Below are positions 4,239-62,500 of a DNA stretch of 64,000 bases, piece after piece. The stretch is taken from assembly GCA_002269645.1 (NCBI GenBank), contig NIVC01000864.1, positions 250,528 to 314,527 on the forward strand, written 5' to 3'. This DNA comes from Macrostomum lignano (taxonomy: Eukaryota). A program made the translations under genes and the position numbers. Numbering within the stretch: the stretch's first letter is position 1; every line of letters begins with the position of its first letter. The notes below the pieces were generated by a model. It ran no database searches. It was not told the origin of the DNA and saw only the letters and a list, made by a program, of their open reading frames with translations.

Positions 4239-4282
4239 TTTTTTTTTAGTTTAGTTTAGTTTTTTTTCTCAATGATCAACGT

Positions 4283-11755: not shown

Positions 11756-11794
11756 ATTTAGGTTTAAGAGAAAGTTTAATAAACCTCATAAAAA

Positions 11795-12195: not shown

Positions 12196-12235
12196 GGGTT
12201 CATTGTGCTTTTCTTGCCGCATTTCTTGCCGAATT

Positions 12236-41662: not shown

Positions 41663-41728
41663 GCTCGCAGTTCCAGTCAGCAGCGATACGGGAGATGCCT
41701 TGCCGGCTCTGGGCTTGGAAACTCGCTG

Positions 41729-41734
41729 AATAAA
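41729..41734 (+). promoter_or_regulatory. Candidate polyadenylation signal of copy D
   Basis: AATAAA 67 nt after the stop codon. Confidence 0.55.
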
Positions 41735-42189
41735 GACTCCCCGTAATATCATTTTGGCAATTAGCTTTGAATTCCTCCTCCAGAAAATGCTCTTTCCGTT
41801 CCTCTGCTCGGATTTTTCAGAGACTGACGCAAATTATTAGAGTAAAAAGTACCAATAGGAAGTAGATAAACTGTATCCCGCCCCTGTTTACCCTGTGATT
41901 TACGATTATCTGTACTGAAATTAAACCTCACGCCTGACCCACCATTCATTCAATGCATTCAATCCGCTCTTAATTAATCATAATTCCTAAGCCAACCGAG
42001 TCAGAGTGTATACTGTACTATACTAAATATTTTTATGTATTTGTACATGGTTGACAAGCGCTCAGAATGATAAAAGTACAAATACATTATTCCCTCACGA
42101 AGATCCTGCAGAGTCACAAGAGCTCCTTCTGACACGACCTCTTCATGCTCCAGCTGCAGGTGCACGGCGTCACTTGGAGGGTCTTGGGC

Positions 42190-43690
42190 AGCAAAACTCA
42201 GGCGAGACAAGGCATCTGCATCTACCATCAGTCTTCCCGGCACATGCTCCACCTCGTAGTCAAAAGCAGATAGCCGCAGGACCCAGCGAGTTAGTCTTGC
42301 CGACACTGTTTTAGGGAGATTTTTGCTGGGATTAAAGATGTACTTCAGTGGCTCGTGTTCAGTCTGGAGCGTGAACCTCTTCCCCAGAAGCATCTCGCGA
42401 GCTCGCTCCACCGCCCAGACAATCGCCAGCGCCTCCCTCTCAATGTTGGAGTAGTTGGCTAGTAGCGTTGGAGTAATGTTGGAGTAGTAGTACTTGTAGG
42501 TGGAGTGATCTGGCTTACCGAGAGCTCTGTCGAGACCTCGCGCTCGAGGAATTTGCTCCGGTCCTCCTGGTTGCCGAGGCCGGCGATGAGACGCATTTTG
42601 ATCAGCTGCTTAGCTGGATCAACAATATCGCCCTTCAGCTTCTCGAATTCGCAGACCACCGCCTGCTCTCGAAGTCGGGCAGCGAAGCCGGCTACTGTCT
42701 TGCCCTCTCCTTGGCGCATGGACATGAAAGCCGCTCGCTCGCCAATCTGCAGCCTCTTATTGGGTTCCAGAAACCGCACGAGGCACTCCTTGATTTCCGC
42801 CCACTTCATCTGCGAGAGCGGTTTGGGCGCGACCAGCTGCTTCACTTTGATGAGCTGTGCCACGCCAATGCAGCCAAGGAAGGCATCGGTCAACGCCAGA
42901 TTGCCGGCTGTGTCATCAGTGCGATCGGTGTCCTTCACTCTTTTTGACCGCGCCTGGGCGTCAAAGACTTTGGTCCATGCCTGCAACTCCTCAATGCTGT
43001 TTAGGGGCAACGGGTCCCGTAGCTTTATGGACATCCGATGATCCTGCTTGCGACGCCAAAATGTTAGAATGAACAAGTCGGTAGCCGATAGATTGCGAGG
43101 CGAGAAAACGAACGTGCCAAGTGCACCGTCCAACATCGTCGGACTCCTACTCCGGGTGGCCTGAGGCGATCCAGGTGCCAGACCGAACTGCGGAAAGTGT
43201 CCTGTCCTGCGGGTTATGAGAGCGGTGTTCGCCAGGAACGGTGTGCCTCGGACGCTAGTGTCGGACAATGCGCCGGAGTTCAAGTCAGAGAAAATGTCCC
43301 AGTGGCTGCGCAGCATCGGGTGCCAGGATCTGCACACTCCGCCGTACCATCCGGCTTCGAACGGTCAGGCAGAAAGGCTAGTGAGGATCATCAAGGATGG
43401 ACTCAAGGCGTGAACGAAAATGGTGCCGTTCGACCACTTCCTAAAATGTTAGAATGAACAAGTGGGTAGCCGATAGATTGCGAGGCGAGACAACGAACGT
43501 GCCAAGCGCACCGTCCAACATCGATAAAATTTATTGTAAGCGAGCAACAATATCAGCCACCCCAACCCCAGAGCTAAAACAGCCACAGCGTACATTGAAG
43601 ATACACACGCACGCACGGAGTTAAAATGACAAACGCAACTGCATGGAATAAAAACAACCCCAACCCCCAAGCACGAGACCCAACAAGGAA
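42190..43690. mobile_element. Scrambled Ty3/Gypsy fragments: RNase H (-), gag (-), PBS/LTR end, integrase core (+)
   Basis: ARLTRW...DADALSRL; ERAAFMSMRQ...LREQAVVCEF; LVSDNAPEF...PYHPASNGQAER. TGGCGTCGCAAGCAGGAT next to ...CTAACA. ~80-bp direct repeat at ~43055 and ~43444. Confidence 0.82.
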
Positions 43691-44564
43691 TTGGACGGGA
43701 CTTAAGCAATTCGTGGACCCCAGCCACTAAGCAACTGCTCCGGCGGGAGCATTTGATGCGCATTCGCCAGCACCTGCTGTTATCAGATCCGGCAGATGCT
43801 GTTCTGTGGGCTCTCGTGCTGACGGACTGGTTCGGCATGTTGTGTTTCGATAATCTGTGCGCCCGCAAGAAAACGGGTGAATCGGCGAGCGCGATCATGA
43901 TCTCTGATGTCAAGTTCAGCCGCGCTGGTGTTACCATCTATGTAGCTAGCTCGTTCAAAGACTGTAGTTCGGTGAGCGTGTTCACACCATCCAGGTCCTG
44001 GTCATGGGCCCAAGGGGGGTCCGCCACCGCCTGCATCGTCTGTTTGGCAAAATCGGACTGGAAGCTTCCGGCGTGGTGGAGCAACATTTGATTTTGATGC
44101 TGGGCAGAGCGTGGACCACATCAAACTGCTGGGAGATTGGCGCAGCTCGGCAGTTTAGCGGTAAATCTCTGATGGCAATGCCGGTAACCTCGCGGCCCGT
44201 CGTTCTATGTCTGCTCGCCTTGGCTCCTATGGCTCCTATCTTTTGCTTCCTCTCTCCTCTGACTCGCCTGCTATTTTGGAGTTTGGGGTTGCTCCCCTGT
44301 TCGTTGCTTTGTGCTCGCTGTCCTCCACGTTCTGCTGTTCTGTCTTCGTCACTTGCCTAACCCCTAAGATAAATACACGAGTCTCGGTTTGTAAGCCGGA
44401 ACATTTGCTAGTACGCTCGTATTGACAAACTACGCGTTTTCAAGTCTTCATAGTAATCACGAAAGGACGACAGTTTATTCATTGACGAAAGATTCGAAAG
44501 AGCGCGTGGTGAGTTGCATTGCCGAATATTTTTACGGTGAGTTTTCAAGTCTCTCTTCTTTAAC

Positions 44565-46055
44565 TCACAACTGAGCCGGTCCGCAGTTTCCACACCAGAA
44601 AGGGCCGGTTTTCGTTGAACTTTAGTATGACATTTTTATCCGCTTCATGCGTCCGGCCAGATTTTTAAGAGTGGACCAGATCCTGGGCTCGTAGCCGTTC
44701 TCAAGGAGGAATTTGTTCCAGCGGTCCCGTCTCTCCGCTTCCAGGCTCGAGTTGATTTGCGCTTGTAGGTCCGCAATACTAGGGTCCGACGGGTTTAAGT
44801 CCAAGTGGCGGCAGGTTCGCATTGGAGTACCGCAGGGCAGCGCCATCAGCCCGCTCCTTTTCGCCTTTTATCTGGCTAAGGCTCCTGTGCACATCAATCC
44901 GACTACTAAGCTAATCGGCTACGCTGACGATCTTACCGTTGCCGCCTCGTCCCCAAGCTGCAATTCCATTGAACAACAACTGGATCACTATCTCGCTGAA
45001 CTCGCTCCGTTCCTCGAGTCGCGCAAGCTCCAGAGTTCTACATCAAAGTGTACGGCCACTCTGTTCAGTCCAGACCAGCGCGAATACTTCTGCCAGCTTA
45101 ATGTCTTCATCAACGGCTCTCCACTGCCACAGGCCGTCCATCCAAAAACTCTGGGCGTGACCTTCGACCCAAACTCTCCTTTGCGAGACACGTCTCCATC
45201 TTTGCGGAGAAAACCCAGAAAAGAAATAGCCTGCTACGCTGCCTCGCCGGCTCATCGTGCTGCTGTTGCAAGGAACTTTTGCTGACACCTTTAAAGCTCT
45301 TGGCAGAAGTCTGCTCGACTACGCTGCGCCGGTCTGGGGCCCATCATCTCGAACTCGTCCTGGACTCGGCTTCAATCGGTCCAGAATGCAGCAATTCGCA
45401 GCATCACCGGCTGCACAGCCCTTACCTCTGAAGTGAATCTACACAGTGAAGTTCAGTTGCTTACCGTCCGCCAACACAACCGGCTCCTTTCGCTCCAGTT
45501 CAAGCACCGCACCAGACGCCCGGAACATTCATGCCACCATCTTTCCTGTCTCCCACCTCTGCGTAGACTCATGAAAGCCTCCATCTTCACTGCTGAGCAT
45601 TTTAACGCCGATTGGGTGCCGGTTCCAGCCCCGGATGTCCTTGACGCTGGCTGCAGCCTGGTATCGCGCCAAGAGGGCCCAACCCACGCAGCCAGTACAG
45701 GCCATGCTGGACAGTTTTCCACCGAACCGCGTCATTCGTGCACAACGACCTAAAATTCACCGCTCCAAAGTTCGCCTCCCCCGCCGTGTGCGGTGCACGC
45801 TGGCGCAGCTTCGCTCCGGTTTCTTCCCGCTTCTTCGCGACTTTCAGTCGAGGATCAACCCTGGCGTCGCCGCGGTTCGTCCTGCTTGCGGCGGCCTTGA
45901 GCCCCAAACGGTGGCCCACCTCTTCAACTGCCCTGCGCCTATCTGACGCAGCTTTGTCCGAGTGACTTATGGACTAACCCGATCGAGACGTGCACCTTTC
46001 TGGAGTCAGCCGCCCTCGGCGGGCTGGGACCCCGGTCGTAGGTTAACACACACAC
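44565..46055 (+). mobile_element. I-group (Ingi/Vingi-like) LINE with inverted 5' segment, copy 1
   Basis: VPQGSAISPLLF, GYADDL, C-terminal CxxC...HLFNCP and (CA)n tail; 44565-44795 is inverted. Confidence 0.85.
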
Positions 46056-47420
46056 GTCTCAAAGGTCAAGCTTCAACCGGCGGTCATCGTCAGCTATCTG
46101 AGACTAAGACCGCAGCGATCATTTTCACCAGCAGGACCAAGTGGCAGATTCGGCCGCTCACGCTTTACGGAAGGGAAATCCCCTTCTGCAAGCAGACTAA
46201 ATGTATTACTCTGGACCACAAGCTGAACTGGTCACCCCACGTTTAAGCAAAAGCTAAAGAAGGTCCTCGCAGTCCTCGCGCAACTTCGCAGGGCTGTCGG
46301 CACCACCTGGGGGCTCACCCCCAAGCGCTTCTGGTGGATCTACACTGCAATGGTTAGGCCTGCTATCTCGTATGGCGGCCTAATCTGGGCTAGCACCCTG
46401 CAGATGAAGACCTGTCTAGAGGCCCTTAGGAGAGCGCAAGGGCACGCATGTCGCACGATCATGAGCGCCCCTCCGTCTGCTCCATACGATGGCCTCAACG
46501 CCTTCCTCAACATTCTTCCGCTGGACATCTTTGTCCGCAAGGAAGCGGCTAAGACTGCCCGCCGTCTAATTGACACTGGCATTCGTATCCTGCCCCATAG
46601 GACCATGGCTAAGCGCAAGCTCCTGCCCCACGCCGACCTCTGCCTCAAAGACTTAAGAGACGGCGGCGGGCTCCACGTCTTATCTGACGGTGAACCCCGC
46701 ACTCTCAACCTCTTTCAGCGCTACAAGGTCACCATCCCCTCTAGGGATGCTGCCAATGACCACAGGAATTTCCAGGAGGGCCATTGCTACACGGACGGAT
46801 CCATCAAAGACGGCCGCGCCGGCTTTGGGGTCTGCATCATCATCAACGGCCGCTTCATTGCCACGCATGCTCAGCACACTAGCAGACTCTCCACGGTCTT
46901 CCAGAACGAAGTCCTTGCTATCAGCTCTTGCGCTGCAGAGCTGAACGCAAAGGGTACGAGAGGAGAGACTATTGTCATCCACTCCGATAGCCAGGCCCTT
47001 TGCTACACCACAACGAACTCCCGGACAGTTGCCGACTGCGTCCGGCATCTCAACCTCCTGGCCAGTAGCAATACTGTCAGGCTGAAGTGGATCCCAGGGC
47101 ACGCAGGGTTTCCGGGGAACGAGCTGGCGGACACCATCGTCAAGAGGGGCGGCTCTGGCTCTTTCTTTGGCCCTGCCCCCTTGGTCCCTATGCCCTCGAC
47201 AGTCATCAATCGTCAGATCACCCAAAACTGCCGGCAATCCCGTGCCGCGGTTCCTCGCCCGTCTCGCAGGCTCAGAAACGTTCTTCTGAACCAAAATCGG
47301 AAGGATATTCGAGCCCTTGTCGTGACCCTTACCGGCCATGTCTACCTCGCCAGACACTCCTTCCTCCGAGGCGACCTCGAGAGCGAACTTTGCCCTTTTT
47401 GCGAGTACGACAATGAAGAT
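46056..47420 (+). mobile_element. LOA/R1-like LINE remnant: 36 bp of ORF1 joined to RT C-terminus and RNase H
   Basis: TWGLTPK...MVRPAISYG, YTDGS, VFQNEVLAI, HSDSQA and WIPGHAGFPGNELAD motifs. Confidence 0.85.
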
Positions 47421-49747
47421 GCTCTGCTCAGCTCAGCACTCTTATTCTCTCCCTCCAATCTCTCCCCATCTCTGTCAAGGACTACTCAAGTAACATATAC
47501 TCGTATATGGGACGCTACACTCGAACTCTATGGTAAATGTCGCCGAAAACTACACTACAGAGATAGGAGGTTTCAATTTTTTCATCACAAAAATTGTTAT
47601 TGCTTTTGATAGGAGAAAGACCCAATGTTCATCTTTCGATATGTTGTGCCTTCCTTATAGCTCTATTGAGATTCATAAAGCTTATTTATTTATAGTGTAT
47701 TTTTCGGCGAAAAGCCTCTGACTTTTCTGCAGCTCAAAAGAGCGCCGTTTCTAATTTCATTTGACCTGCCTGATGAGATACCAAATTTGCTGCAAAGGCA
47801 AGCAAAGTACGCTGTGGTCTATCGAGGAGACAGGTGGTTTGCCACTGAGCCAGGAAGCCATCTTGCTCACTTGTATGACGGTTGCCAATTGGGCAACTAC
47901 AAGCTTGAAGAGCGGAAGAGCAAACCAAAAATCTGCATTTGGAACATTATCCTCACCTATGAGAACAACACGGGCTTTTTCTACATTGACCACTGTTGTA
48001 TCCCTGCAGCCCCCGGCCCGGCAGTAGGGTGGTCCTACAGGGTACAGTACAATCGGGTCCTTGCTAAGCCTGCGCGCGGGCGCTAGGGCGAGCACTTCCC
48101 CTGACAGTCTCGGGCGTCAGGACGCTCCCACGCAGCCTTTCCACGCGTCGGGACGCAGTGGTGCGGGCCGCCTTCAGCGAGGCGTTGGGACGCACTGGCT
48201 GGCGTAGAGGCGTAGAGGCGTACGGTAGGTATCCTACTGCCGTATCAACCCCAACTAGCTGAGTCGGCGTCCGGACACACGGACTCTCTGCCCCCCTAGG
48301 CAACCGAAAGAAAGAAGACAGGACGCGCACTTACTTAGTTGGCAGCTGTCGCTCAGGGCTCAGGAAGATGGCCTTCTTTGGTGTATTTCTTTATCAAAGG
48401 GGGTCTGTATAACTTGGGCTGTAGATAGCTCTGACAAAAACTGAATTCACAGAGAGGGAACAGTCGAGACGCGCACCGCTCCAACCCGCCGCGAGCGATG
48501 TTAAATAGCACACGCCCGCGGAGGGGGGAGGGCCATGCGCTCTCAACTCCACCACCCCACCAACCCCCCAGCCAACCCCCCCCCCCGGGGACGGCCACCA
48601 AGCCCGCCGCCGGCTCAGCCAATCACTACGCGACTGGCTGGCCGCGACCAATCGCCACGCGGGGCGAGCAAACAAATGCCAAAACTTAAGCCTCTGGCTG
48701 CGGCAACGCAAAAAGGGGGTGAATAACAAAAACTGTAAACAACTAGTTGAGGGGTGACTCAGCCCGCTGGGGCTAGGTGCACAGGCACCGCAGAAGTGCA
48801 CAACACAACACCCCGCCTCCCAACAAAAGGAAGAAGCTCATACGAGCCAGTAACGCTGATTACAGAAACAAATGACAACGAATGACACCACAGCTGCACA
48901 ACCTGCACCGCACATGGGCAAGGGGTTCAAAGCCTGCTTGACCTACATGACTGAAACCACGCGTACATGAAATAAAACAAACAGATGAACCAATGATGAC
49001 AAAAGAAATTAACGTTTGATGCCGCAAAAATTTGACCATTGACGACGCAACAAGATTTATGGAATTCCGACACCAATGATTTCACGATGAACGACGCAAA
49101 AGGGTTTAATGATAAAGGATCAGAGCTAGTCACCGATCTCCACCGCACCGTCCCTCTGCACATCCCTGCCGAGTCGGCTGCCCTTTCTCGTCCCTGCGCC
49201 GTTGACTCTCGACACCTGGCCTGGGTCCGGGGTTCCCGCGCCGGCGTCGGTGTAACCAGATTTCAAGCTTCTGTCCGGTGACCGCTTGGCGTCCGCTGGA
49301 ACCCGTTTGGCCTGGGACTATCAGCTCAGTGGAGCACGCCGCTGCTGCTCACCCGGCCGCCGCTATGGCTGCCCATTCTGGACGGCCAAGTGCTCGCCAG
49401 CCGTGCACCTCCCGCCTCCAGTCTCCCGGCTGCCTCTCTACCTAACCCTCATACCACCCGTACGGTAACCCATCCGCATACGACTAATCCGAAAAATACG
49501 ATACACCCAACCCCCGCACCAGGGACAGGGAAACGAACAACCGGACACGCCCGACAGGGCCTGCACCCCCAGCCCAACCCACACTCACACCCTACTAGCA
49601 CTCGCACGCCACCACTCGAGCACAACAGCGCAGCAGCGCCTGGACCTGGCCCGCACCTAGCAGCTCGAACCGAGGGATCACCACCTTCCGCATCACTCGA
49701 GCTGCTCGCTTTAAACATTCGCGTTTCCAACCGCTCCGACGACCGCG

Positions 49748-50577
49748 TCAATTGGACCACGTCACTGAAATGTCCCGGCGCAGAAACTTGAGCACTTGAA
49801 GTGTCACCGCCGTCAGATAACGCCTCGGCTCTTCTCGCCGCACCCTAAACAGGTCAGCCAACTCCTCAAACACGTTCACGATCTCTTCCTCCTCGCCCTT
49901 CAGCAATGCCGTTCTCAGACTCCGGTGCAGCTCCACAAATCTCGTTGTGCTCGGTAGCGGTAGCTCCTCCATCTCGACTGTCGTCGCCCCGACCGGTACC
50001 AGCTTCCAAGCCTCGACATCCGGCAGGTCCTCCCCGTCTGTCTCCATCTCTCCGACCTGGTCTGTTTCGTCGTCGCTGATAATGATGCAGTAGCCGCTGT
50101 CTGGCGCATAGCTTCGCTCGAATGACTGACGAAAACCCTGCTCCTCGGCCTCCCAGCCGGGCGGCCGACTTCCGTCGCTGACGACCGACTCACTGTCGGT
50201 ATCCCCGGGTTCGTCGTCTCCACGGAAGGCGTCCGCATCCGACTGCTCGTCCTCACTCGGCATGTCCTCATCTTCCAGCCTGATCGCTTCCAGGATGTCC
50301 TCTGGCACGGGAATGTCTGACGGGGGTTGAACCTGTCTAGCCAACTCTACCGCCGCGCTGAACGAGATTGACGAATCACCGTACATGTCATACAACCACC
50401 GCCGAAATGGGCAACCGAGAATTTCATACGCGACGTTGAGGGCTTTGCATTTCTCTTCTGCGAATGCCCGGTCCGGGTGCTTGTCCGGGTGATACTTCAG
50501 GGCTTGCCGCCGATAGGCTCTCTTGATTGCAGTTGCCTCCACCCCTGGTCGATCTCCAGTTCGTCGTACAAGGACAT
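49748..50577 (-). CDS. J-domain (Hsp40-type) protein with acidic linker and helical LEDGF-IBD/TFIIS-N-like tail, directly 3' of Gypsy pol
   Basis: MSLYDELEIDQG + VEATAIKRAYRRQALKYHPDK...AYEILG...RRWLYD; HPD is intact. The ATG at 50577 needs one extra G in a G-run at ~50545. No introns. Confidence 0.8.
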
Positions 50578-50812
50578 CTATGGAGTGCCGTTTCTTGCCG
50601 TTAAAATCGCATTTTCCGCTACTAAACCTGGTCCGTGTGCCTGCCGACTCATCCACCCGCTACAACCACCTAACCGCCGACAACCCCCAACCCGTTCAGA
50701 ACCTCAGCCGATCCGGCGGTCGCCTGTGCCGAGTCGGATATCTCCTGGTGGTTAGAGTCTCCGCTGCGGCCGCTTCTAGTCCTTCCCATTCTTCTGGTGG
50801 ATCAGGTCCTTC

Positions 50813-52864
50813 TCATTCTTCCGGCAGGCCACTTTGAGGCGACTCCGAGCTTCTCACGCTACCACCGACCTCGTTCTCCAGTCCTTGCTCGACCTCCGCT
50901 GGTGGTGGTCGACCACGTCGGCCTACCTGCTCAGCTTCCTCCTCTTCATCTTCTTGGCTCTGCACGTCCTCTGTCACCGCACCTCCTTCCTCCTGGCTCG
51001 CTTCGTTCGCCGCTGACCTCGACTTCTTAAAAGGCGACAGGTTGTTGAAATGTACTCTTTTGGTCTTCCTTGGATTAGCCGGATTCTGAACTTCGTACAC
51101 GGTCTCGGAAATCTTCCGCACCACTTCAACTGGTCCCTTCCAATCGACCCGGAACTTGTTCCACGTACTTTCCTGTCGTAATAGTCTTTCTGCAACTTCT
51201 GGTATGTGCCGGTCGCTTGTCGCACTGCTTCATGTGCTTGATGGAGGTGCTTTCTCAAGCCGGCCACGTACATTGACTCGTCCAGCGGCTCTTGTGGTGC
51301 TTTGTAAGCTACATCCAGTGGTAATCGCATCTCTTGGCCGTGCAGGAGGAAGTACGGTGTGTAGCCAGTGCCGCGATGCACACTTGAACGGTACGCCATC
51401 AAGGCTGAGTCGATTAGTTCATCCCATTTGTGTGACTCTGCTCCCTCAGCGATGTAGCTTCGCAGTACTGACTTCAACGTCTGATTGAACTTCTCCACCT
51501 GCCCATTTCCACTTGGATGGTAGGCCGTGGTTCTGGTTTTCTGGATTTTCAGAAGCGTGCACAGCTCTCGCATTACTCGAGACTCGAAGTTCCGCTCTTG
51601 GTCACTGTGAATCGAACTCGGGCAACCGTAGATACTAACCCAGTGCCCAAATATAGCGCGCGCGCCTGTTGATGCTCGTTGGTTGCGGATTGGGATCGCT
51701 GCCGGCCATTTAGTGAACGCATCCTGCAGCGTTAAGATGTACTGATGACCTCTGGCACTCCTTGGCAACGGCCCGACAATGTCCACCATCACTCTCTCAA
51801 AAGGTTCGCCCGTTCGAATCGGCTCCAGTGGAGCTCTAGCCTTCTTCGCCAACTTCGAGCGGCCGCAGACTTCGCAGCTCCTTACGCACTCGGCGATCTC
51901 GCGGCTGATCCCGGGTCTCCAGAACCGTGCAAGGACCTTTCGCTTTGTTTTCTGCAGGCCGAAATGGCCGCCCGCCACGCCACTATGACAGTCGATCACA
52001 ATCCTCTGCAGCAGACACTGTGGTAGCACAATCTGGTCCGCGCCTTTCCACCTCCGCACCAATATTCCGCCGTCCACCTTGAGCAGCTCGCACTGCGCCA
52101 TGAGCGCTCTGCCCCCTGGGGTCCATCTCAGCTTCTCGCTCACGCTCTCATTTCCGCTGACCAGCTCTTTCATCCATCGAATCTCGTCTTCCGCGTCCTG
52201 CGCTTTTACCAGTTCATGTCGCTCGTCAGCCACATTCAGCGCACTCACACCATTTGAGATCACTGGTGCAAAATCTGAGCAGGATGGACATTCTAGGAAG
52301 CCTGCATGTCGCCGGGTCTGCCGTCTTGACAACGAATCCGCATTTCCATGACAGAGCCCGCTGCGATGCACCACGTAGTAGTCGAATTCTGCCAGCTTCT
52401 CCAGCCACCTAGCACACTGACCTTCCGGATCCTTCAGATTGTGAATCCACTTCAAGTTGCTGTGATCCGTTCGCAAGCAAAATCTTCTTCCAGCCAGATA
52501 GTACCGATACTTGACCATGAACGTCACCACTGCCAGCAGCTCTACTCTGGTCGTGCAATAGTTCCGCTCTGCCGATGACAACGATCTTGAGCCATACGCG
52601 ATAACCTTCTCACTTCCGTCCACTTGCTTCTGAGACAACACGGCGCCAACGCCAATAGATGAGCTCGCATCCGTGTCGAGAATGAACTCGCCGGCCTCGG
52701 GTCCAAAATCCGGAAACGCCATCACGTCTGTACTCGTCAGCCGCGCTTTCAAGTCCCGGAACGATCGCTCTTCGTCCGGTCCCCACTCAAACTCGACACC
52801 TTTGCGAGTCAACCTGAGCAGCGGCTCGGCAACACTCGAGAAGTATTTGATAAATCGGCGATAA
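50813..52864 (-). mobile_element. pol: Ty3/Gypsy pol 3' half (RT thumb, RNase H, HHCC-DDE integrase, GPY/F tail)
   Basis: YYRRFI, FILDTDAS, NADSLSR, GHFG...CEVC, VDIVGP, HSDQ, GQVEKFN and WKGP motifs; small deletion/frameshift at ~51165. Confidence 0.93.
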
Positions 52865-52866
52865 TA

Positions 52867-53835
52867 CTTCGGGTGTGTCATAAGTAATGTCACTGATGTG
52901 AAAACAGACGAACTTGCAATCGCAGATGAACAAAACTGTACCACTCAACAATATAGAGTCCCCCAATATCAATCACCCTCTGGCGGTGCTCATACAGCTT
53001 GTCCACCTCAGCCTGCAGGTGTTTTTCCTCCAACTGCCATAACCAGTGCAACGCAGCCTGTTTTACCTCTTCATGGTTTGCGAAACTCTTCTTGGAAAAG
53101 TCAGCCTTCAGCCATTTGAACAGGAATCTCTTGCAAAAGTTGAAGTCTGGGCTGTAGGGACTGTCAGAGCAGATTCACTCGCCGCACAGGCAGAAAATTC
53201 GAAACAGCCTTCAGATGTGCAGCCGTGCGGTGTCCATCTGCCACAGAACTTCGTCCCGGTGACATGGATTTGACCGGAGAGTGCGCCAGAGGTCTCCAGT
53301 GTGCCGGACAAAGTCGATAAAATACTGGCCATCGACCTTGATGTTCGGTGGAGTTGTGCAGATGGAGACTCGTTTGTTTGGCGTGAAGGCTACCAGCAGC
53401 ATGGTCTTCTTGTCCAAGATGGACTTCCTAGTCACCATCGGCCTGGAGTCCCCAGCTCCCAGCCAGCAGCGATTGTCTGCCTTGCTGCCCTTGCCATCCA
53501 GGTGGAGCCAGCTTTCATCCTCAGCAACCAGGCAGTTTAGGATGTCATTCAAGCCCCGGCTGCTAAACACCTTGCGGATCTGCTTGGTGCAGGCGTCATG
53601 TCGAGATTCATGATGATTTTTGTTCGCTGCATAGACGGTTTTTCATCGCGTTGCACTTGCTAAATCTGCTTGGCGTATTCTTGCGATAGCTTGGGCCATA
53701 AACAACCTATGCACGTCTCAAATGCACTGCTATTGCTTCACTAAGTATACTTTGCAGCTACACTACCCACAAGTCCATGTGCCTACATATTTTAGACAGA
53801 GGCCTGCAGTGACATTACTTATGACACACCCGAAG
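52867..53835 (-). mobile_element. Internally deleted mariner/Tc1-family element (969 bp)
   Basis: 29-bp TIRs CTTCGGGTGTGTCATAAGTAATGTCACTG, each flanked by TA; EDESW, QMD.AR and SPYSPDF motifs. Confidence 0.9.
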
Positions 53836-53837
53836 TA

Positions 53838-55065
53838 TATACAGTCTACGACCAGAATTTTTGTACGAGCAAATCGTGCGGCTGTTAGAAATTTTGCATG
53901 GCCTCGGTGGAACAGCCGTAGCCATAATCTGCGACAATCATTTCACTAATCAAAGCTGTTTCCGAAGATTTCAGCGGGAGAGTGACTCACAACCATGGAA
54001 GGCAGTAAATCCAGTAAACAAGAATAAACCTTTGTTTCTACTATACGACAGTGTTCATTTGATGAAGAATATTCGCAACAACTGGTACACCCAATCGCAC
54101 AGACAACTTGAGTTCCAGTCAATATCAGACAGCGGAGTAACTAGTATAGCTAAATGGAATGATATTATTGAAATTGAGGAGCGATCGCGTGGTCACGTAG
54201 TTCGACCAACTACGCTCAGTCCGGTGTCTTGCCACCCGTCACCATTGGAACGACAGAAAGTTTCACTAGTGCTTGATGTGTTCAATGATAAAACGGTTGC
54301 TGCTCTTCGTTTGAATAATCGTCTTGAAACAGCGGATTTCGTTGAAAGTGTACTAAAATTCTGGAAAATCGTAAACTGCAAGTCGCCATCTGCATACGTC
54401 CTACTTAATGACAAATATAGAGAGCCAATTAAGTCAAACGAGTGCTACTTGGTGAGTTTGTTAATAATTAACAACTGTTAGATGAATATGCACACCTTTG
54501 TTTTTTATTAAAATCGACAGTGATTGTACTAAACCTTTCAGGTGAATGCCAGTCGGACCGACTCGAGGGAGAGTTTTCCATTTATCGTCAAGGTCATGGA
54601 GGCTGCTATTACATATCAGTGGATCAGATTATGGCTAGTGCTCGCCTCCGCCGCATGCAGCTCTATGCGCAGCTTCAAGCTTCGCCACCAGATCACTCGC
54701 CATCCGCATGTTGTCAGCATGATGTCACCGATGAAGAGACTGTCAGTTTTGACGAGCTAAGTTTATCCGTTGCTCGAATTTCTACCGAAGAAAAAGCCTC
54801 TCTTTACTACATTTGTGGCTACGTTTCACACAAAGAAAATTTGCCTGACCGAACAATTGCAACAAGTTTGCCTGGTCTGGATACTTCCACTGCTTGTAGT
54901 GAGTTCACCACGCTTGTATCTCGAGGGAAACTGAGCCATCCGCCTGAATGGTTAGTTGTCTTTGCCTGCTTCTGTTATGCCCATTCTATTGGTTCTGGGC
55001 AGCGTTGTGTTAACAGTTCCGTGCTTGTATTTGAAAAAATCTTCGAAAAATTTTTTTATGTTTAA
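53838..55065 (+). pseudogene. P-element/THAP9-like transposase remnant
   Basis: AIICDN, LYDSVHLMKNIRNNW, ERQKVSLVLDVF and QSDRLEGEFSIYRQ.HGG motifs. Confidence 0.85.
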
Positions 55066-55558: not shown

Positions 55559-56197
55559 CTAAAGCAAACGGCCTTTTCTAGAATTTCTGCCATTCGCGAG
55601 TGCAGCGTCCTGAGTTGTTAAGTAGTCCTTGGCCTCGGCATGCTTGGCTTCATCAGCTTTCCGCTCCTCGCAACGGAGGATCGTCAGCTCAGTCAGACCA
55701 ATGTGGATTGTGGACTTAGGCGGTAGGCGCTTAGCCCAGTCGTCGGAGAGCCCTAGGATCACCGTAGCCCCCTTCTCCTTGCGGGAAGTGGCGTGGTACA
55801 GGAGCCCTTTGACTTCGAGGTCAGGGTGCAGCTTCAGCAAGATTTGCCTAAGCTGATCTCCGGACTTAATGGCACTGCCGGCCGGGATCCAGACGCGAAA
55901 GCGCTGGGTCTTTTGTCGCTCGCCCTTGCTGGCGAAGACGAGCTTGCCGAGCTTCTTGGGCCAGTTCAGCTTTGGCAGAAGCTCGCGTAGATTGCGGCTG
56001 CTCTCCTCCGAGTTGCACCAGATGAAGATGCAGCCGTCGGTCTTGACAGACTTGACCACGCTCACGGGGCGGCCTGCCAGGAGCTGGTTAATGAGCGCAG
56101 TATCAATGGTGCGCCAGGCACTGTCGAGCTCGTCTGCCGTGAGGTCTTGCTCTTCCCCGAAGACGATGACCGCCGGTTGGAGCTTGACCTTTGAGAC
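55559..56197 (-). mobile_element. LOA/R1-like ORF1 fragment, host of LINE copy 2
   Basis: Open frame VSKVKLQPAVIVFGEE...RFRVWIP...; its first 36 bp match 46056-46091. Confidence 0.55.
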
Positions 56198-58295
56198 GTG
56201 TGTGTTAACCTACGACCGGGGTCCCAGCCCGCCGAGGGCGGCCGACTCCAGAAAGGTGCACTTCTCTATCAGGTTAGTCCATAAGTCACTCGGACAAAGC
56301 TGCGTCAGATAGGCGCAGGGCAGTTGAAGAGGTGGGCCACCGTTTGGGGCTCAAGGCCGCCGCAATCAGGACAAACCGCGGCGACGCCAGGGTTGAGCCT
56401 CGAATAAAAAAAAGTCTCGGAGAAACGGGCAGAAACCGGAGCGAAGCTGCGCCAGCGTGCACCGCACACGGCGGGGAGGCGAACTTCGGAGCGGTGGATC
56501 TCAGATCGTTGCGCACGAATGACGCGGTTCGGTGGCAAACTGTCCAGCATGGCCTATAGTGCCTGCGTGTGTTGGGCCCGCTTGGCGCGATACCAGGCTG
56601 CAGCCAGCGTCAAGGACATCCGGGGCTGGAACCGAACCCAATCGGCGTTAAAATGCTCAGCAGTGAAGATGGAGGCTTTCATGAGTCTACGCAGAGGTGG
56701 GAGACAGGAAAGATGGTGGCATGGATGTTCCGGGCGTCTGGTGCGGAGCTTGAACTGGAGCGAAAGGAGCTGGTTGTGTTGGCGGACGGTGAGCAACTGA
56801 ACTTCACTGTGTAGATCCGTTTCAGAGGTAAGGGCTGTGCAGCCGGTGATGCTGCGACTCGCCGCATTCTCGACCGATTGAAGCCGAGTCCAGGACGAGT
56901 TCGAGATGATGGGCCCCAGACCGGCGCAGCGTTGTCGAGCAGACTTCTGCCAAGAGCTTTAAAGGTGTCAGCAAAAGTTCCTTGCAGCAGCCCAGGATGA
57001 GGCGGCGAGGCAACGTAGCAGGCTGTTTCTTTTCCGAGTTTTCTCCACAAAGATGGAGACGTGTCTCGCGAAGGAGAGTTTGGGGTCGAAGTCACGCCCA
57101 GAGTTTTCGGATGGAGGACCTGCGGCAGTGGGGAGCCGTTTATGAAGACATTAAGCTGGCAGAAGTATTCGCGCTGGTCTGGACTGAACAGAGTGGCCGT
57201 ACACTTTGATGTAGAACTCTGGAGCTTGCGCGACTCGAGGAACGGAGCGAGTTCAGCGAGATAGTGATTCAGTTGTTGTTCAATGGAATTGCAGCTTGGG
57301 GACGAGGCGGCAACGGTAAGATCGTCAGCGTAGCCGATTAGCTTAGTAGTCGGATTGATGGGCACGGGAGCCTTAGCCAGATAAAAGGCGAAAAGAAGCG
57401 GGCTGATGGCGCTGCCCTGTGGTACTTCAATGCGAACCTGCCGCCACTTGGACTTAGAGTCTCGCATGAAGGTCCGGGCTTGTCGTCCAAGAATATAGTT
57501 GGCGAGCCAGGCCTTAACAGAGTTCGGAAGATCCGATTCGGCGAGGTCGGAGAGTAATTTGTAATGGTCAACGCAGTCAAACGCCATCCGAAGGTCGATC
57601 GCGCCAACGCCGGTCCTGGCCGGGGGTTTCGACAGGCAGAATCCCGAGCAAATCTGCTCGACCAGTTGGCAGAGGGCGGTCATGGTTGAGTGGTGCGGGC
57701 GGAAGCCATGTTGCCAGGCAGGAAGCTGAAGATGGTCAGTCAGAAGCGGTAGCAGGATCTTCTCCAAGATTTTGGCGAGCGGCGACAGGAAGGAGATCGG
57801 GCGGTACGACGCGCCATCGTCCTGCGGTTTGCCATCTTTCAGAAGGGGACAGATTAAGGACTTCTTCCAGACCGCAGGGATCTCGATACCCTCCGCACCA
57901 ATAACCCGTCGGACCCGTCGGACCTACAAGCGCAAATCAATTCGAGCCTCGAAGCGGAGAAACGGGACCGCTGGAACAAATTCCTCCTTGAGAACGGCAA
58001 CCAGCCCAGGATCTGGTCCACTTTTAAAAAGCTGGCCAGACGCCCGAACGCAGATAAAATGTCATACTAAAGTTCAACGAAAAACCGGCCCTTTCTGGTG
58101 CCGAAACTGCGGACCGGCTCAATTGTCAGTTCACGAGGCCGCGCCTTCACTGCTCCAACCCGCAGATGCGTGTCGTCCGTCGACGTATTAAGGCCCTACC
58201 TCGCGCCGCCGGAGACGCTCCTGTCTGTTCGGCCGATGGCATCGAGCATGCCATCAAGCGGTCCAAGCTCTCCAAAGCCATCAGCCCGGACGGAA
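56198..58295 (-). mobile_element. I-group (Ingi/Vingi-like) LINE with inverted 5' segment, copy 2
   Basis: QHGFRP, DLRMAFDCV, PQGS and YADD motifs. 57903-58295 codes the pre-RT region (AIKRSKLSKAISPDG) on the opposite strand. Confidence 0.88.
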
Positions 58296-58305
58296 CCCCC
58301 CTATT

Positions 58306-58545
58306 GAGAGTCAGCCTGTCTCAGAAATCCCCATTGAGAGACAGTCTGTCTCAGAAATCCCCATTGAGAGTCAGTCTGTCTCAGAAATCCCCATTGAGAG
58401 TCAGTCTGTCTCAGAAATCCCCATTGAGAGTCAGTCTGTCTCAAAAATCTCCATTGAGAGTCAGTCTGTCTCAGAAATCCCCATTGAGAGTCAGTCTGTC
58501 TCAGAAATCCCCATTGAGTCAGTCTGTCTCAGAAATCCCTATTGA
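58306..58545. repeat. 30-bp tandem repeat, ~8 units
   Basis: Unit gagagtcagtctgtctcagaaatccccatt. Confidence 0.95.
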
Positions 58546-59568
58546 ACTGCCCGAGCGGCTGACTAAGCCGCCGTGTGCCGAAAGCCCCCAGCCTCAGCGC
58601 TTGGGAGAACACGGGTGCCGAATTACGAGGCCTGAGTCGTGAAAGTAACTATTTTATTTTTAGTACGAACTACATAGTAGCTAATACAACAAGGCAGAAG
58701 CTAAAGTTATTTATTTATTCACACTATTTACGAGCTTAAGCATAAGGTACGGAAAAGTCAAGACTTTTAATCACCGATTTCATTAGAAAGTACCTTAAAA
58801 TCACAGACAGGCATTGCACAAACAAAAGCCAATTGTTTAAATGCGTTTGGAACAAATTGATCAGCTGATTTCTAGTATTTTCTGCACAGTGTATTTGTAA
58901 TTTTATTATTCTGAGCGCTTGCGCATCATGCTCAAATTGATACTGAAAGATTTAGCTATAATCACTAGTCATGCCAATATCGCAGTTATAAATTTTACAT
59001 CTAAACAGAGTTGGTGAGAATTAGCAGGTTTCTTTTGTCTGATTAAAACTATTTGATTAGAAACAAAAATACCATTGAATACTGTCACTCTATCTACTCA
59101 CATTTTGGAGAATTCGGCTCATACACTGAAGCCAGTGCAAAAACAGATAATGATGGCGTCCACGCTATTAATTCGAGTTTTAGGATATGAGAAATAACAA
59201 TTCGACAGTAATTGGACTTGCGATATCAAAGCAATTTAATACTCGTACACTGACTGGGTTGGCTTAGAAATTTAGATTAATTGTGAGCGGATTGAATGCA
59301 TTGAGCGAATGGTGGGTCAGGCTTGAGAATACTAATTTGGTTTGATTGCAGTACAGATAATCGTAAATCACAGGTTAAACAGGGGCGGGATACAGCTTAG
59401 CTACTTATTGTTGATAGTTCTGACTAAAAAATCCGAGCAGAGGAACGGAAAGAGCATTTTCTAGAAAACAAATTCAAGGCTACTTGCCAAAATTAAATGA
59501 GAAGGAGTGTTTATTTAGCGAGTTTCCAAGCCCAGATCTCCAAGATCGCTGGTGATTGAACTGCGAGC

Positions 59569-62500
59569 TCACTGGATCAGCCACTGCTGTGCAGATACCG
59601 TGAGGACAGCCAGAGAGCAGACGGCTCCAGCACTGAGCCACGCCAGATCCATCTTTAGTTGAGCCGACGATTTCGTCTGCGTCGAGTTTCGTGACGACGA
59701 CTTGGCCGTGGAATTGGTCTTGTTCGGGTCATTTGCCAAAGTTTGCGCCACGGTCCGGTGGACGTGCGAAGTCAATTGTTTGGTGGTCTGCGTATGATGT
59801 ACAATATGTACATTGCGTATGGGCATACTGAACTTATGGTTTGTCACGCTGGTCAATGTTCTGGCCATAGTGGAAGGGAGTAGGCCTAATCGCTTTTCGT
59901 CTTCAGCGGCCAAGGGCTTCTCATCTTGAATGTACAATCTATCGATAGACACACTGGACACGTTTGCAGCGGATATGGCAATCACTTTTATAAACATCGG
60001 AGGTTCATTGAGAGCCATATACTGATTGTAGATGTTCAACGAAGATTGGTTGGTGACAGCCAGTTCCGGACAGGAGTAATATCCGTTTACAGCGGTGCAG
60101 TTTCCACCTGTTTCTCTGTAGCGAAGACTGTAGACAGGCACATCTGTTGGAGTCAATTCGGATGAACATGAGCGTTAAAAAGAGTGAAATGTGCATGACA
60201 GCTGTGCAACAAATACTCGTATTTGGGGCACTGTTTGCTCTTTGAACCAGATGCCAAAATGTGTTTTGGTTTTATGAAAAAATATTTTTCAATAAAATTC
60301 ACATTTCAGCTTGTACTTTAGCAGAGCTGCTTCAAGCGTTACACCTACCTGCTTTAGGCGGGAGTAGACCAGACGGATCTTTAACTGGATTCCATTTGAT
60401 CTCAATTATTTTACTCGCATAATCTTTTCTGCTTATATAGATCGCCATGCTTGGCTTAGGAACAATACGACGTCTGTCAAAGTTGGGGTCTTCCGCCTGA
60501 ACAGTCAAGGTGCCGCCAGACAATTGCATTTGGAACGGGAACGTGATAAACACATCGACAGCGTATTGACGAGCTTTCTGTACTGCATAGAGTGGTACCA
60601 TGGCACTGTATGCTCCTCTATCTGTACAAATGAAGTATGAGCAATATGCCTTTTAAATCGCTGTTTAACAACAATAGTTTTTGTAAAGCTGCTACTGAAT
60701 TTTTAGTCTTCACTTACTGTAATATTGTTCAGATAGATTAAATCGAGCCACTTCCTTGTTGCTTGCTGTGACAACTGCGTATATCTGATACTTGTGTTGA
60801 ATCTGAGATCTTGGTAACAGGTTCACGAAGACACCGATTCGAGTATCATACTTGACCATTGTCACATTATTTGGCTTCACCCTACACGTAGTATCTCTGG
60901 GCAGTAAGGCAAATTGTCTTCCTGTGATAACTATAGTCATTGTTGAGGCCGCCTGTCTGCGAATCCGGCGTGCGAGACCGACTGCGAGATTCGTTAGCGT
61001 CCACTTTCCGCTCTGTTGGAGTGGCGGGTTACTATTGTTTGGGAATCCTTAAAGTTGACGGTTCTTAGTACTCGTAATTAACTGCCTAAACTATACCCCC
61101 CATTTCGAATTTTTTGCTCCTGAAAGAGCATATTTAGAATTTAGTAACACACTGTTACAGTAGCTGTTAAAATATTGGCTTTTTGCTTTGGCACGTAAAT
61201 TGGCTCAACTGACCTCTACCTCTGCGTCAGGAATTTGCATTGTCACGGATCCGACTGCAACATCAACTGTACAAACGGCACTGCTGCCTCCAGAGCAATT
61301 GAAAGTCCTACCGCTCGGCGACCGAAACATGAGGCGCAGAGAGCCAACCTTGGCGGGATCGCTTGGCAGAAACAGCGAGAAGACGAGGTTGCTGCGAGTA
61401 CTGACGTCGAATTCCACCGGATACCGCAGGTCAGAGGGAACTTGCCTCGAATCCAGCTGTGGGAACAAGGAACAGTTCGTACGGAGTCAAACTAAGATGG
61501 AAGACAATCGGAATGCAACCAGTGCACTACCTAAGCGCATTTGATTTATTTAGTAACTTAACTAGACACAACACTAAAAATAGTTTGTCGCTTAAGTAGG
61601 TTATGTGACTGATTTCAGAAGAATCCCGTTGAGCATATTTTCATAATGCTGCAGGATCTCATTGGAGCTCTAATCTCACCCATTTCTCCCCTATCTCTAT
61701 ATCATCTCTCCTCCATCTCTCCCTCGCGTATTTTCCATCTTTTGCATCCTCTCTCCTTTATTTTACTTATCAATTTAAAATTTAAACTTTCATTTTTAAT
61801 TTCGACCGATACTTGGTAAGCAAAATAAAGGTAGATCAAAATGAGAGCTAAAGCTCAAAGAGGGTCCTGATATCTTAGCCTGATATAATAGCTGGCTTTC
61901 AGAGTTTTTACGTTACGTTAAAACATCATTTACGTTGGGATAATAACAATAGCGACTGTAAAAAGTGAAAGGCTGCTTATTGCTAGTGTTAAGAAGACAC
62001 TTTATTTGCTTCAATAATTAAGTAACATAATGCATTACTACGTTTTGGCTTTCACGGCCCCCTGAGAATTTTATCCCACGGTCAACAGCAGACTTAAACC
62101 CTTACTCAGACAAAAAGAATTTGGCTGTTGTCGATGAATACAATAATAGATGGTGAAAGAAGCGAAAAGTAATAAATTTTTGTCGAGCAAGCTTCACAAT
62201 AGAATTCACCCCAACTCACGACGACGGTCTTGTTCACGCCAGCGAGACCAGACTGTAGTGAGGTGAACTCCAGTATTAGTTTGGACGCTGCAAGCTTGCT
62301 GTCGACCGGACTATATAGCTTGCGACCGTCCGTGACGTCGGCAAGAAGCGACATCCGCATGTCCGCACTGTCACCGAACCGAATGGTGTCGACTCTGAGG
62401 CTCGTTTTCGATATCGCATCGATGGTAGAGTTCAGCTTGCTGCTGCAGCCTTCCTGACCATCTGAGACCAAAAGTATCTGACCACTCGATCGATGAGTTG

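What the first reader, a model, noticed from the sequence alone, without database searches (positions are those of the whole stretch)
49748..52864. Gypsy pol followed by an extra ORF: J-domain plus LEDGF-IBD-like tail
Seen: an intronless, GC-rich ORF starts 236 bp after the integrase stop on the same strand, in the position where env or other extra ORFs sit. It has a canonical J-domain (HPD intact) and an acidic linker. Its C-terminus RFVELHRSLRTAL...VNVFEELADL...LKFLRR resembles the LEDGF/p75 integrase-binding domain as I recall it (RLQRIHAEIKNSL...IEALDELASL...LKKIRR; TFIIS-N helical fold). Established: J-domains recruit Hsp70, and the LEDGF IBD binds lentiviral integrase. Inference: the element may encode its own chaperone or tethering cofactor for the intasome or particle. 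I know of no such Gypsy accessory protein. One missing G at ~50545 separates the ATG from the J-domain (decay or a homopolymer error).
Basis: partly seen in the sequence, partly recalled or inferred. Interest (0 to 1): 0.85.

Follow-up and report, generated by a model that had tools for sequence, protein, structure and literature searches.

The report
Retrotransposon carrying its own J-domain gene
A decayed, half-deleted Gypsy-type retrotransposon carries, after its polymerase gene, a gene for an Hsp70-recruiting J-domain protein; this gene is a conserved and apparently undescribed accessory gene of a small retrotransposon lineage best represented in the flatworm Macrostomum lignano, and its tail shows no detectable similarity to LEDGF.

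Summary
On the minus strand, a Ty3/Gypsy pol fragment (52863-50696) is followed after 118 nt by a J-domain gene (50577-49595; Pfam DnaJ E=5e-14, HPD present). Both genes are broken, and the element lacks its 5' LTR, gag, protease and most of RT.

The gene belongs to the element; it is not a neighbouring host gene or retrocopy. The same J-domain / acidic-linker / basic five-helix protein follows pol in every related locus recovered:
- In M. lignano locus L085 it lies between LTRs that are 99.76% identical.
- In metagenome locus L002 it lies between pol and the polypurine tract.
- The two most distant pol relatives (L086, L088) lack it.
- All eight start codons are preceded by YAG, which suggests a spliced mRNA.

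The LEDGF-IBD idea fails. It models confidently as a five-helix bundle (pLDDT 87) but has no significant Pfam, PDB-sequence or Foldseek match. The broader idea of a chaperone or tethering cofactor remains open, because the M. lignano orthologue carries a chromodomain.

I found no published description. I rate it a new variant of a known kind (accessory ORFs of LTR retrotransposons), interest about 0.65. Function is inferred.

The parts
50696..52863 (-). pol fragment of a Ty3/Gypsy element: end of RT, RNase H, integrase (zf-H2C2, rve core, p58_C) and an acidic tail ending in RRPPDRLRF. The gene is broken: 5' truncation (about 520 codons of protease/RT missing, plus gag and the 5' LTR), one frameshifting internal deletion and one in-frame stop.
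   Evidence: Pfam. tblastn with the natural pol of L002 and L085 covers L002 residues 521-1251 of 1254, with one frame change and one stop. The C-terminal motif is shared with L001, L002, L003 and L085.
50578..50695 (-). pol-ORF3 spacer (118 nt). It ends in ...ccatAG directly before the ATG, which looks like a splice acceptor. It contains a GTCGG..CACACGG block shared with L001 and L084.
   Evidence: All eight related ORF3 start codons are preceded by (Y)AG with a 0-1 nt spacer.
49595..50577 (-). ORF3, the J-domain accessory gene (about 327 codons in intact relatives). Broken here: one frameshift and one in-frame stop.
   Evidence: Homologues are P0001, P0027, P0028, P0176/P0033, P0058, P0030 and L085:9953-10933.
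50387..50577 (-). J-domain of ORF3 (HPD loop present; helix II basic).
   Evidence: Pfam PF00226 E=4.8e-14. The AF2 model of homologue P0001 matches solved J-domains in Foldseek at probability 1.00.
49991..50386 (-). Conserved post-J helical block (CPFRRWLYD...AV...IP.PEDI.EA) followed by a disordered acidic, Ser-rich linker.
   Evidence: Alignment. The model has pLDDT<50 over linker residues 109-184. Linker net charge is -9 to -42 across the family.
49598..49990 (-). Family-specific basic C-terminal five-helix domain (motifs LR..LL.G, EPR..L....LQ.L.FLRRDI, GRGRR.W, AG.LL.LL..C.RVV).
   Evidence: AF2 model of the P0001 domain: pLDDT 86.8, pTM 0.81, five helices. Net charge +8 to +18. No Pfam, PDB or Foldseek match.
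48822..49594 (-). 3' untranslated region of the element, with a T-rich tract before the polypurine tract, as in L002, L003 and L085.
48811..48821 (-). Polypurine-tract-like run (gggaggcgggg) directly before TGTTG.
   Evidence: The same arrangement occurs in L002 (gaggaggggga + TGTTGTG) and L085 (ggggacgggag + TGTCATG).
47994..48810 (-). Putative 3' LTR (817 bp, TGTTG...CAACA) with ATTGG/CCAAT boxes and a TATTTAA box. It is inferred: there is no 5' partner in the window.
   Evidence: The termini and length match the LTRs of L002 (79-817, TGTTG...CAACA) and L085 (833 bp). Co-linear similarity to the L002 LTR is weak (E=0.007). No LTR pair in the window.
52864..53838 (.). Neighbour, not part of the element: a non-autonomous DNA transposon with perfect 32-nt terminal inverted repeats (TIRs). 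It sits exactly where the pol homology stops.

Best explanation
The window holds the 3' half of a dead Ty3/Gypsy LTR retrotransposon. It belongs to a small lineage that carries a third gene (ORF3) between pol and the polypurine tract / 3' LTR. The closest named relatives are in the flatworm Macrostomum lignano.

ORF3 encodes an element-borne J-domain protein with three parts:
- an N-terminal J-domain with an HPD loop;
- a long acidic disordered linker;
- a basic five-helix C-terminal domain found only in this family.

Shown: the gene is part of the element; it has been inherited with pol through deep divergence; and its reading frame, HPD motif and C-terminal motifs are kept.

Inferred from the established biochemistry of J-domain proteins: the J-domain docks onto host Hsp70 and triggers its ATPase, while the C-terminal domain chooses the client or place. 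ORF3 would then bring host Hsp70 to some step of the element's own cycle. Candidate steps are particle assembly or uncoating, or remodelling of the integration complex at chromatin. The chromatin option is favoured by the chromodomain inserted in the M. lignano orthologue.

Inferred from a conserved YAG directly before every start codon: ORF3 is translated from a spliced, or spliced-leader trans-spliced, subgenomic RNA, as env genes are.

In this window the gene is inactive: one frameshift, one premature stop, and an element without its 5' half.
For: - J-domain: Pfam E=4.8e-14 with HPD. The model of the intact homologue matches solved J-domains.
- Family: exhaustive HMMER over 1.84 billion representatives found only about 6 proteins with the C-terminal domain, out of 51,243 J-domain hits.
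- Position downstream of pol: L001, L002, L003, L085, L087 and L089.
- Inside the element: L085 LTRs 3649-4481 and 11506-12339 are 99.76% identical and flank gag, pol and ORF3. In L002 the order is LTR end, PBS, gag, pol, ORF3, PPT, LTR start.
- Window: PPT-like run followed by TGTTG...CAACA.
- Co-divergence: identity to the window in an integrase segment versus ORF3 is L001 74%/37%, L002 57%/33%, L085 52%/30%. The relatives without ORF3, L086 and L088, are the most distant in integrase (47% and 45%).
- The L085 ORF3 combines DnaJ, Chromo and the family C-terminal domain.
- YAG precedes the ATG in 8 of 8 loci. A GTGAGT donor-like site lies just 3' of the PBS in L002.
Against: - No functional or expression data of any kind.
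- The client of the C-terminal domain is unknown, and the domain has no recognisable relative.
- The window copy has no 5' LTR, so its 3' LTR is inferred.
- L087, the closest full pol hit in the database search, carries a more divergent ORF3 subtype. This does not fit simple co-divergence.
- The chromodomain occurs in one sublineage only.
- dN/dS could not be measured: the only close pair is identical and the rest are saturated.
- The integrase-J fusion in the M. lignano gene model P0030 may be a gene-prediction artefact. The related locus L003 has separate ORFs.
Confidence: 0.6

Rival explanations
1. One reading: the ORF3 tail is a homologue of the LEDGF/p75 integrase-binding domain (TFIIS-N fold) and binds the element's integrase in the way LEDGF binds lentiviral integrase.
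For: Both are compact bundles of five helices (the LEDGF fold is from general knowledge). The chromodomain in the L085 orthologue and a possible integrase-J fusion model suggest a link with integration.
Against: No PF11467 or PF08711 hit in any of 7 members at E<=10, nor in the full proteins. A profile search of all PDB sequences at E<=10 returns only designed helical bundles and one ribosomal protein. Foldseek with a pLDDT-87 model finds nothing at E<0.7, and no LEDGF or TFIIS chain among the top 50. The domain has about 113 structured residues, longer than the roughly 80-residue IBD I recall from general knowledge.
Confidence: 0.04
2. ORF3 is a passenger: a host DNAJ fragment picked up once and carried along without benefit to the element.
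For: J-domains are ubiquitous host modules, and LTR elements do capture host sequence. The window copy and L003 are decayed.
Against: Open frames of 264-351 codons persist in lineages that share only 30-50% identity. Conservation is concentrated in the J-domain (HPD kept) and the C-terminal motifs, while the linker varies freely. The acceptor-like YAG before the ATG is kept in otherwise unalignable spacers. The C-terminal domain has no host counterpart among 1.84 billion representatives.
Confidence: 0.08
3. ORF3 is a host gene, or a host DnaJ retrocopy, that happens to lie next to a Gypsy fragment in this TE-rich region.
For: The window copy has no LTR pair, and the region is a patchwork of LINE, DNA-transposon and LTR fragments.
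Against: The same pol-ORF3 adjacency is seen in several independent loci from a genome, several sequencing runs and a metagenome. In L085 the ORF lies within the LTR pair.
Confidence: 0.02
4. ORF3 acts on the host rather than on the element's own proteins. For example, it could divert Hsp70 to blunt a silencing or stress pathway, or tie the element's activity to heat stress.
For: Viral J-domain proteins such as the polyomavirus T antigens act on host complexes (general knowledge). Several M. lignano LTR-retrotransposon families are strongly heat-induced through heat-shock elements in their LTRs (PMC12801592).
Against: No heat-shock element (GAAnnTTCnnGAA, either strand) in L085 or in the window's putative LTR. 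That paper does not mention J-domain ORFs. Nothing in the sequence points to a host target.
Confidence: 0.15

Closest known systems
Accessory ORFs of Ty3/Gypsy elements between pol and the 3' LTR (errantivirus env; plant aORFs, PMC7264820; bdelloid rotifer ORF3s, PMC5408684)
   Same: Same position (after pol, before the PPT and 3' LTR), same strand, with an acceptor-like site before the start codon as for spliced env mRNAs. Lineage-restricted and conserved within the lineage.
   Different: The product is a J-domain protein with no signal peptide, transmembrane or fusion features. I found no described aORF with a DnaJ domain.
Polyomavirus large and small T antigens (virus-encoded J-domain proteins; general knowledge)
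   Same: An N-terminal J-domain with HPD, encoded by a mobile genome and joined to a specialised C-terminal part. Expected to recruit host Hsc70.
   Different: A DNA virus. There is no similarity beyond the J-domain. The targets of ORF3 are unknown.
Chromoviruses (Ty3/Gypsy elements with a chromodomain fused to the integrase C-terminus; PMC2864245, PMC3605345)
   Same: The M. lignano orthologue (L085) carries a Pfam-significant chromodomain, the module that chromoviruses are thought to use for choosing chromatin.
   Different: Here the chromodomain sits in a separate ORF3 protein, between a J-domain and the helical domain, not on integrase. It is absent from the window copy and from the five other family proteins scanned with Pfam (P0001, P0027, P0028, P0176, P0058).
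LEDGF/p75 integrase-binding domain and TFIIS N-terminal domains
   Same: A small bundle of five helices.
   Different: No sequence, profile or structural similarity detected. The ORF3 domain is larger and strongly basic.
Cellular class C (type III) J-domain proteins
   Same: A J-domain plus an unrelated targeting domain, without the G/F region, zinc finger or DnaJ_C domain.
   Different: Encoded inside a retrotransposon. The targeting domain was found only next to Gypsy pol genes.

Membership tests
J-domain proteins (DnaJ/Hsp40, PF00226) | Profile match above the curated threshold | tested here: met
   Window ORF 52.6 bits against 27.8, E=4.8e-14. Homologues score 59-69 bits.
J-domain proteins (DnaJ/Hsp40, PF00226) | HPD tripeptide between helices II and III | tested here: met
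   KYHPDK in the window. HPD is present in every family member that includes the J-domain.
J-domain proteins (DnaJ/Hsp40, PF00226) | J-domain fold | tested here: met
   The AF2 model of P0001 matches solved J-domains: Foldseek probability 1.00, rmsd 1-3 A over about 70 residues. Tested on the intact homologue, not on the broken window gene.
J-domain proteins (DnaJ/Hsp40, PF00226) | Stimulation of Hsp70 ATPase | not testable with these tools
   Biochemical property; inferred only.
J-domain proteins (DnaJ/Hsp40, PF00226) | Intact coding sequence in this window | tested here: not met
   One frameshift and one in-frame stop relative to intact homologues.
LEDGF IBD / TFIIS N-terminal domain (PF11467, PF08711) | Profile match to the family | tested here: not met
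   No hit at E<=0.1 for the full proteins, nor at E<=10 for 7 C-terminal domains. No LEDGF or TFIIS chain in the PDB profile search at E<=10.
LEDGF IBD / TFIIS N-terminal domain (PF11467, PF08711) | Structural match to solved IBD/TND structures | tested here: not met
   Foldseek of the pLDDT-86.8 model against PDB: best E=0.73, none with E<=0.001, and no IBD/TND among the top 50.
LEDGF IBD / TFIIS N-terminal domain (PF11467, PF08711) | Binding to integrase | not testable with these tools
Ty3/Gypsy LTR retrotransposon | pol with domain order RT - RNase H - integrase (zf-H2C2, rve) | tested here: met
   (window fragment). (complete in L002 and L085).
Ty3/Gypsy LTR retrotransposon | Pair of LTRs, PBS and PPT | tested here: inconclusive
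   In the window only a PPT-like run and a putative 3' LTR are present, with no 5' LTR or PBS. Met in relatives: L085 has an LTR pair at 99.76% identity, and L002 has the LTR end, a PBS, a PPT and the LTR start.
Accessory ORF of the element (as opposed to a neighbouring gene) | Lies between pol and the PPT / 3' LTR in independent copies | tested here: met
   L085, L002 and L003. The window is consistent.
Chromovirus-like targeting | Chromodomain encoded by the element | tested here: not met
   Absent from the window's ORF3 and pol fragment. Present only in the L085 ORF3 (PF00385, 35.5 bits against 25.1).

The most novel reading that the evidence does not exclude
A lineage of animal Ty3/Gypsy retrotransposons encodes its own Hsp70 co-chaperone. 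The protein would be made from a spliced or trans-spliced subgenomic RNA. Its private C-terminal domain, joined to a chromodomain in one sublineage, would deliver host Hsp70 to the integration complex or to chromatin. This would be a separate-chain counterpart of chromovirus integrase targeting, and the first retroelement-encoded J-domain protein.
Probability: 0.4. Interest if true: 0.8.

Novelty: new variant of a known kind. Interest (0 to 1): 0.65.

Why it matters
LTR retrotransposons and retroviruses are known to depend on host chaperones, but they are not known to carry a J-domain gene of their own. Among mobile genomes, the polyomavirus T antigens are the textbook case.

A conserved, element-encoded J-domain protein would show that recruiting Hsp70 is worth a dedicated gene to a retroelement. 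It would also give a defined handle on which step of the cycle needs the chaperone.

The variant with a chromodomain suggests a new way of coupling chromatin recognition to integration. The gene occurs in M. lignano, a laboratory flatworm with good genome and transcriptome resources whose LTR elements are already under study (PMC12801592). The descriptive tests can therefore be run on existing data.

The C-terminal domain is also an orphan fold candidate.

Tried and rejected
- Metagenome scan with the family alignment: it returned 80 loci, all ordinary DnaJ genes. None carries the C-terminal domain.
- Word-indexed search with the family alignment: swamped by DnaJ. It recovered only three family members.
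- Foldseek with the full-length model: dominated by the J-domain, so the C-terminal domain was modelled and searched separately.
- Heat-shock elements in the LTRs, as a link to the heat-induced M. lignano elements: none in L085 or in the window's putative LTR.
- The conserved RRPPDR(F/Y/L) motif at the end of pol as a possible docking site co-evolving with ORF3: rejected. It is also present in L086, which has no ORF3, and absent from L087 and L089, which have one.
- dN/dS: the only close pair (L003/L090) is identical over 260 codons. Other pairs are too diverged.
- The integrase-J fusion in the M. lignano model P0030 was not used as evidence, because the related locus L003 has separate ORFs.
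- Direct profile-profile comparison with LEDGF/TFIIS-N sequences: not done.
The natural intact homologue P0001 was used for all modelling.
- tRNA and Rfam scans of the window: nothing found.
- The source organism was not identified. The best named pol relatives are from M. lignano at 50-52% identity.
Full report
**What is in the window.** The feature lies on the minus strand.
- An ORF at 52944-50974 carries RT_RNaseH, Integrase_H2C2 and rve. A short overlapping ORF carries Integrase_p58_C.
- Downstream, ORF 50656-49748 (302 aa) matches Pfam DnaJ at E=4.8e-14, covering profile positions 13-63. It has KYHPDK and an acidic stretch.
- An ATG at 50577 opens another frame that encodes MSLYDELEIDQG, the missing first helix. 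One frame change links the two frames (compare P0028 and P0001).

**Boundaries corrected by homology.**
- The only full-length hit in the 5.8-billion-protein index was P0001 (309 aa, 37-40% identical).
The extra stretch is RGRRSGW...IPRFELLGAGQVQALLRCCARVV, which fits the family motifs.
- pol homology likewise runs on to 50696 and ends in RRYPTRHRRPPDRLRF. This motif closes pol in L001, L002, L003 and L085. The spacer is therefore 118 nt.

**State of the window copy.**
- ORF3 has one frameshift and one in-frame stop.
- The pol fragment has one frameshifting internal deletion and one in-frame stop. It lacks about 520 N-terminal codons.
- gag and the 5' LTR are absent.
- pol homology stops exactly at a 975-bp non-autonomous DNA transposon with perfect 32-nt inverted termini, at 52864-53838.

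**Is ORF3 part of the element?** An exhaustive HMMER search of 1.84 billion representatives gave 51,243 J-domain hits. Only a handful share the C-terminal domain:
- P0001, P0027, P0028, P0033/P0176 and P0058;
- residues 497-806 of P0030, a 3375-aa M. lignano gene model (UniRef A0A1I8G8I7).

Every locus that could be fetched shows the gene just after pol:

| Locus | Source | Arrangement |
|---|---|---|
| L001 | Logan run | 246 nt after an integrase tail that is 74% identical to the window's |
| L002 | JGI metagenome contig | 83 nt after pol |
| L003 / L090 | Logan runs | ORF3 downstream of the integrase tail in L003, where its 5' part is decayed; L090 carries the intact gene (the fetched 1.9-kb contig starts only 366 nt upstream) |
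| L087 | Logan run | 100 nt after pol |
| L085, L089 | M. lignano genome | ORF3 after pol |

- L085 settles the question. Its LTRs, 3649-4481 and 11506-12339, are 99.76% identical. They enclose gag (two CCHC fingers), protease, RT-RH-IN and ORF3 (9953-10933), with a purine run directly before the 3' LTR.
- L002 shows the same order: LTR end (...CAACA), an 18-nt PBS starting TGG, gag, pol, ORF3, the purine run gaggaggggga, then TGTTGTG at the contig end. That last stretch matches the 5' LTR start.
- In the window, gggaggcgggg followed by TGTTGTGTTG at 48810, and ...CAACA at 47994, delimit a putative 817-bp 3' LTR. It has ATTGG and TATTTAA boxes like those of L002 and L085, and weak co-linear similarity to the L002 LTR. 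This LTR is inferred, not proven.

**Inheritance.**
- Identity to the window in a 144-residue integrase segment falls in the order L001 74%, L087 58%, L002 57%, L085 52%, L089 48%, L086 47%, L088 45%.
- ORF3 identity follows the same order: L001 37%, L002 33%, L085 30%.
- The two most distant pol relatives, L086 (Actinostola sea anemone) and L088, have no ORF3.
- The simplest reading is a single acquisition at the base of a sublineage. ORF3 then evolved about twice as fast as integrase.
- L087 and L089 carry a more divergent ORF3 subtype. Its C-terminal part aligns only weakly to the family profile (E=0.004). This is a loose end.

**The protein.**
- Across the family, a J-domain runs into a conserved CPFRRWLYD...AV block. 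A variable acidic linker follows (net charge -9 to -42). The protein ends in a basic domain (net +8 to +18) with the motifs EPR..L....LQ.L.FLRRDI and GRGRR.W.
- AlphaFold2 on the natural P0001 domain, with six relatives in the alignment, gives a five-helix bundle with pLDDT 86.8 and pTM 0.81.
- The domain has no significant match anywhere:
  - Pfam on seven members at E<=10;
  - a profile search of all PDB sequences, which returned only designed helical bundles;
  - Foldseek against PDB (best E=0.73) and BFVD (best E=0.86).
- The LEDGF-IBD/TFIIS-N reading therefore fails as a homology claim.
- The M. lignano L085 ORF3 has the same J-domain and the same C-terminal domain (hhalign probability 95%, E=3e-8). 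Between them it carries a Pfam-significant chromodomain (E=9e-9).

**Expression signal.**
- In all eight loci the ORF3 start codon is preceded by YAG with a spacer of 0 or 1 nt: window ccatAG|ATG, L001 tgtAG|ATG, L084 tgcAG|ATG, L085 tacAG|ATG, L090 tgtAG|ATG, L002 gcAGcATG, L087 gtAGgATG, L089 taAGtATG.
- A pyrimidine-rich run often lies upstream, while the spacers are otherwise unalignable.
- Position -3 is usually a pyrimidine, so this is not a Kozak context. It looks like a 3' splice site.
- L002 has GTGAGT just 3' of its PBS.
- I infer a spliced subgenomic mRNA, or spliced-leader trans-splicing, which is common in flatworms (general knowledge). This is untested.

**Mechanism.**
- Shown: a conserved J-domain accessory gene that belongs to the element.
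- Inferred from J-domain biochemistry: recruitment and activation of host Hsp70 at a client chosen by the C-terminal domain.
- The client is unknown. The chromodomain variant points to chromatin and integration. The basic charge of the C-terminal domain would also suit nucleic acid or the acidic integrase tail.
- Rivals are listed separately, with what speaks for and against each: passenger gene, host-directed function, and a chance neighbour.

**Literature.**
- Full-text searches for DnaJ or J-domain together with LTR retrotransposon, Gypsy, ORF3 or chromodomain found no description of such a gene.
- A review of accessory domains does not list it.
- The 2025 catalogue of M. lignano LTR retrotransposons (PMC12801592) mentions neither DnaJ nor chromodomain.
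- The search covers open-access text only.

**Verdict.**
It is wrong on LEDGF homology.
- The copy in the window is a dead fragment.
- I class it as a new variant of a known kind.

Noticed in passing
window 52864-53838: A 975-bp non-autonomous DNA transposon with perfect 32-nt terminal inverted repeats. It holds a transposase-like remnant ORF (53211-53570, minus strand; no Pfam hit). It sits exactly at the point where the Gypsy pol homology ends.
   Followed up: partly
window 40269-46091 and 56162-61030: A large inverted duplication (arms 75-98% identical). It comprises LINE RT/RNase H sequence and CLCA-like host-gene ORFs. The Gypsy fragment lies in the roughly 10-kb centre between the arms. 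This could be a real palindrome or an assembly artefact.
   Followed up: no
window 19187-19982 and 30707-32037; also 20630-21653 and 22272-23148: Satellite arrays. A 37-nt unit (about 21 copies) occurs again as its reverse complement (about 36 copies) 11 kb away. There are also a 57-nt array and a 36-nt array, in a region of strong GC skew.
   Followed up: no
window 58299-58545: A 30-nt tandem repeat (8 copies, 94% matches) read through by an ORF as SLSQKSPLRV repeats.
   Followed up: no
window 42001-43523: Fragments of a different LTR element: RNase H on the minus strand and an rve piece on the plus strand, only 33-38% identical to the J-bearing lineage. An 81-nt direct repeat lies at 43058/43443.
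   Followed up: partly
window 53861-55065: Two plus-strand ORFs beyond the DNA transposon have no Pfam hit. From memory they resemble P-element/THAP9-type transposase. This was not tested.
   Followed up: partly
window 62840-63622 (minus strand): An ORF with a CLCA N-terminal domain (PF08434, E=2.5e-9). This is a metazoan host gene and the only clue to the host within the window. The source organism remains unidentified.
   Followed up: partly
window 36001-38000: An AT-rich trough (GC 26%, against 40-59% elsewhere).
   Followed up: no
L085 9953-10933 (M. lignano NIVC01000975.1): ORF3 combining a J-domain, a chromodomain and the family C-terminal domain, in an element whose LTRs are 99.76% identical. 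This is a young copy. No matching target-site duplication was evident at its ends.
   Followed up: partly
L002 820-837: The 18-nt PBS TGGCGCCCGAACAGGGAC lies 2 nt after the LTR end. As I recall, it is the tRNA-Lys-type primer site. No tRNA comparator was available to test this.
   Followed up: no
window 50578-50695; L001 and L084 spacers: A short block, GTCGG(N)CACACGG, is shared by the pol-ORF3 spacers of the three closest copies, about 70-90 nt before the start codon. Its meaning is unknown.
   Followed up: no
P0030 (UniRef A0A1I8G8I7, M. lignano): A 3375-aa gene model labelled 'J domain-containing protein'. It strings together protease, the integrase tail, the ORF3 protein and unrelated low-complexity sequence, so it is probably a chimeric prediction over a retrotransposon.
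   Followed up: partly
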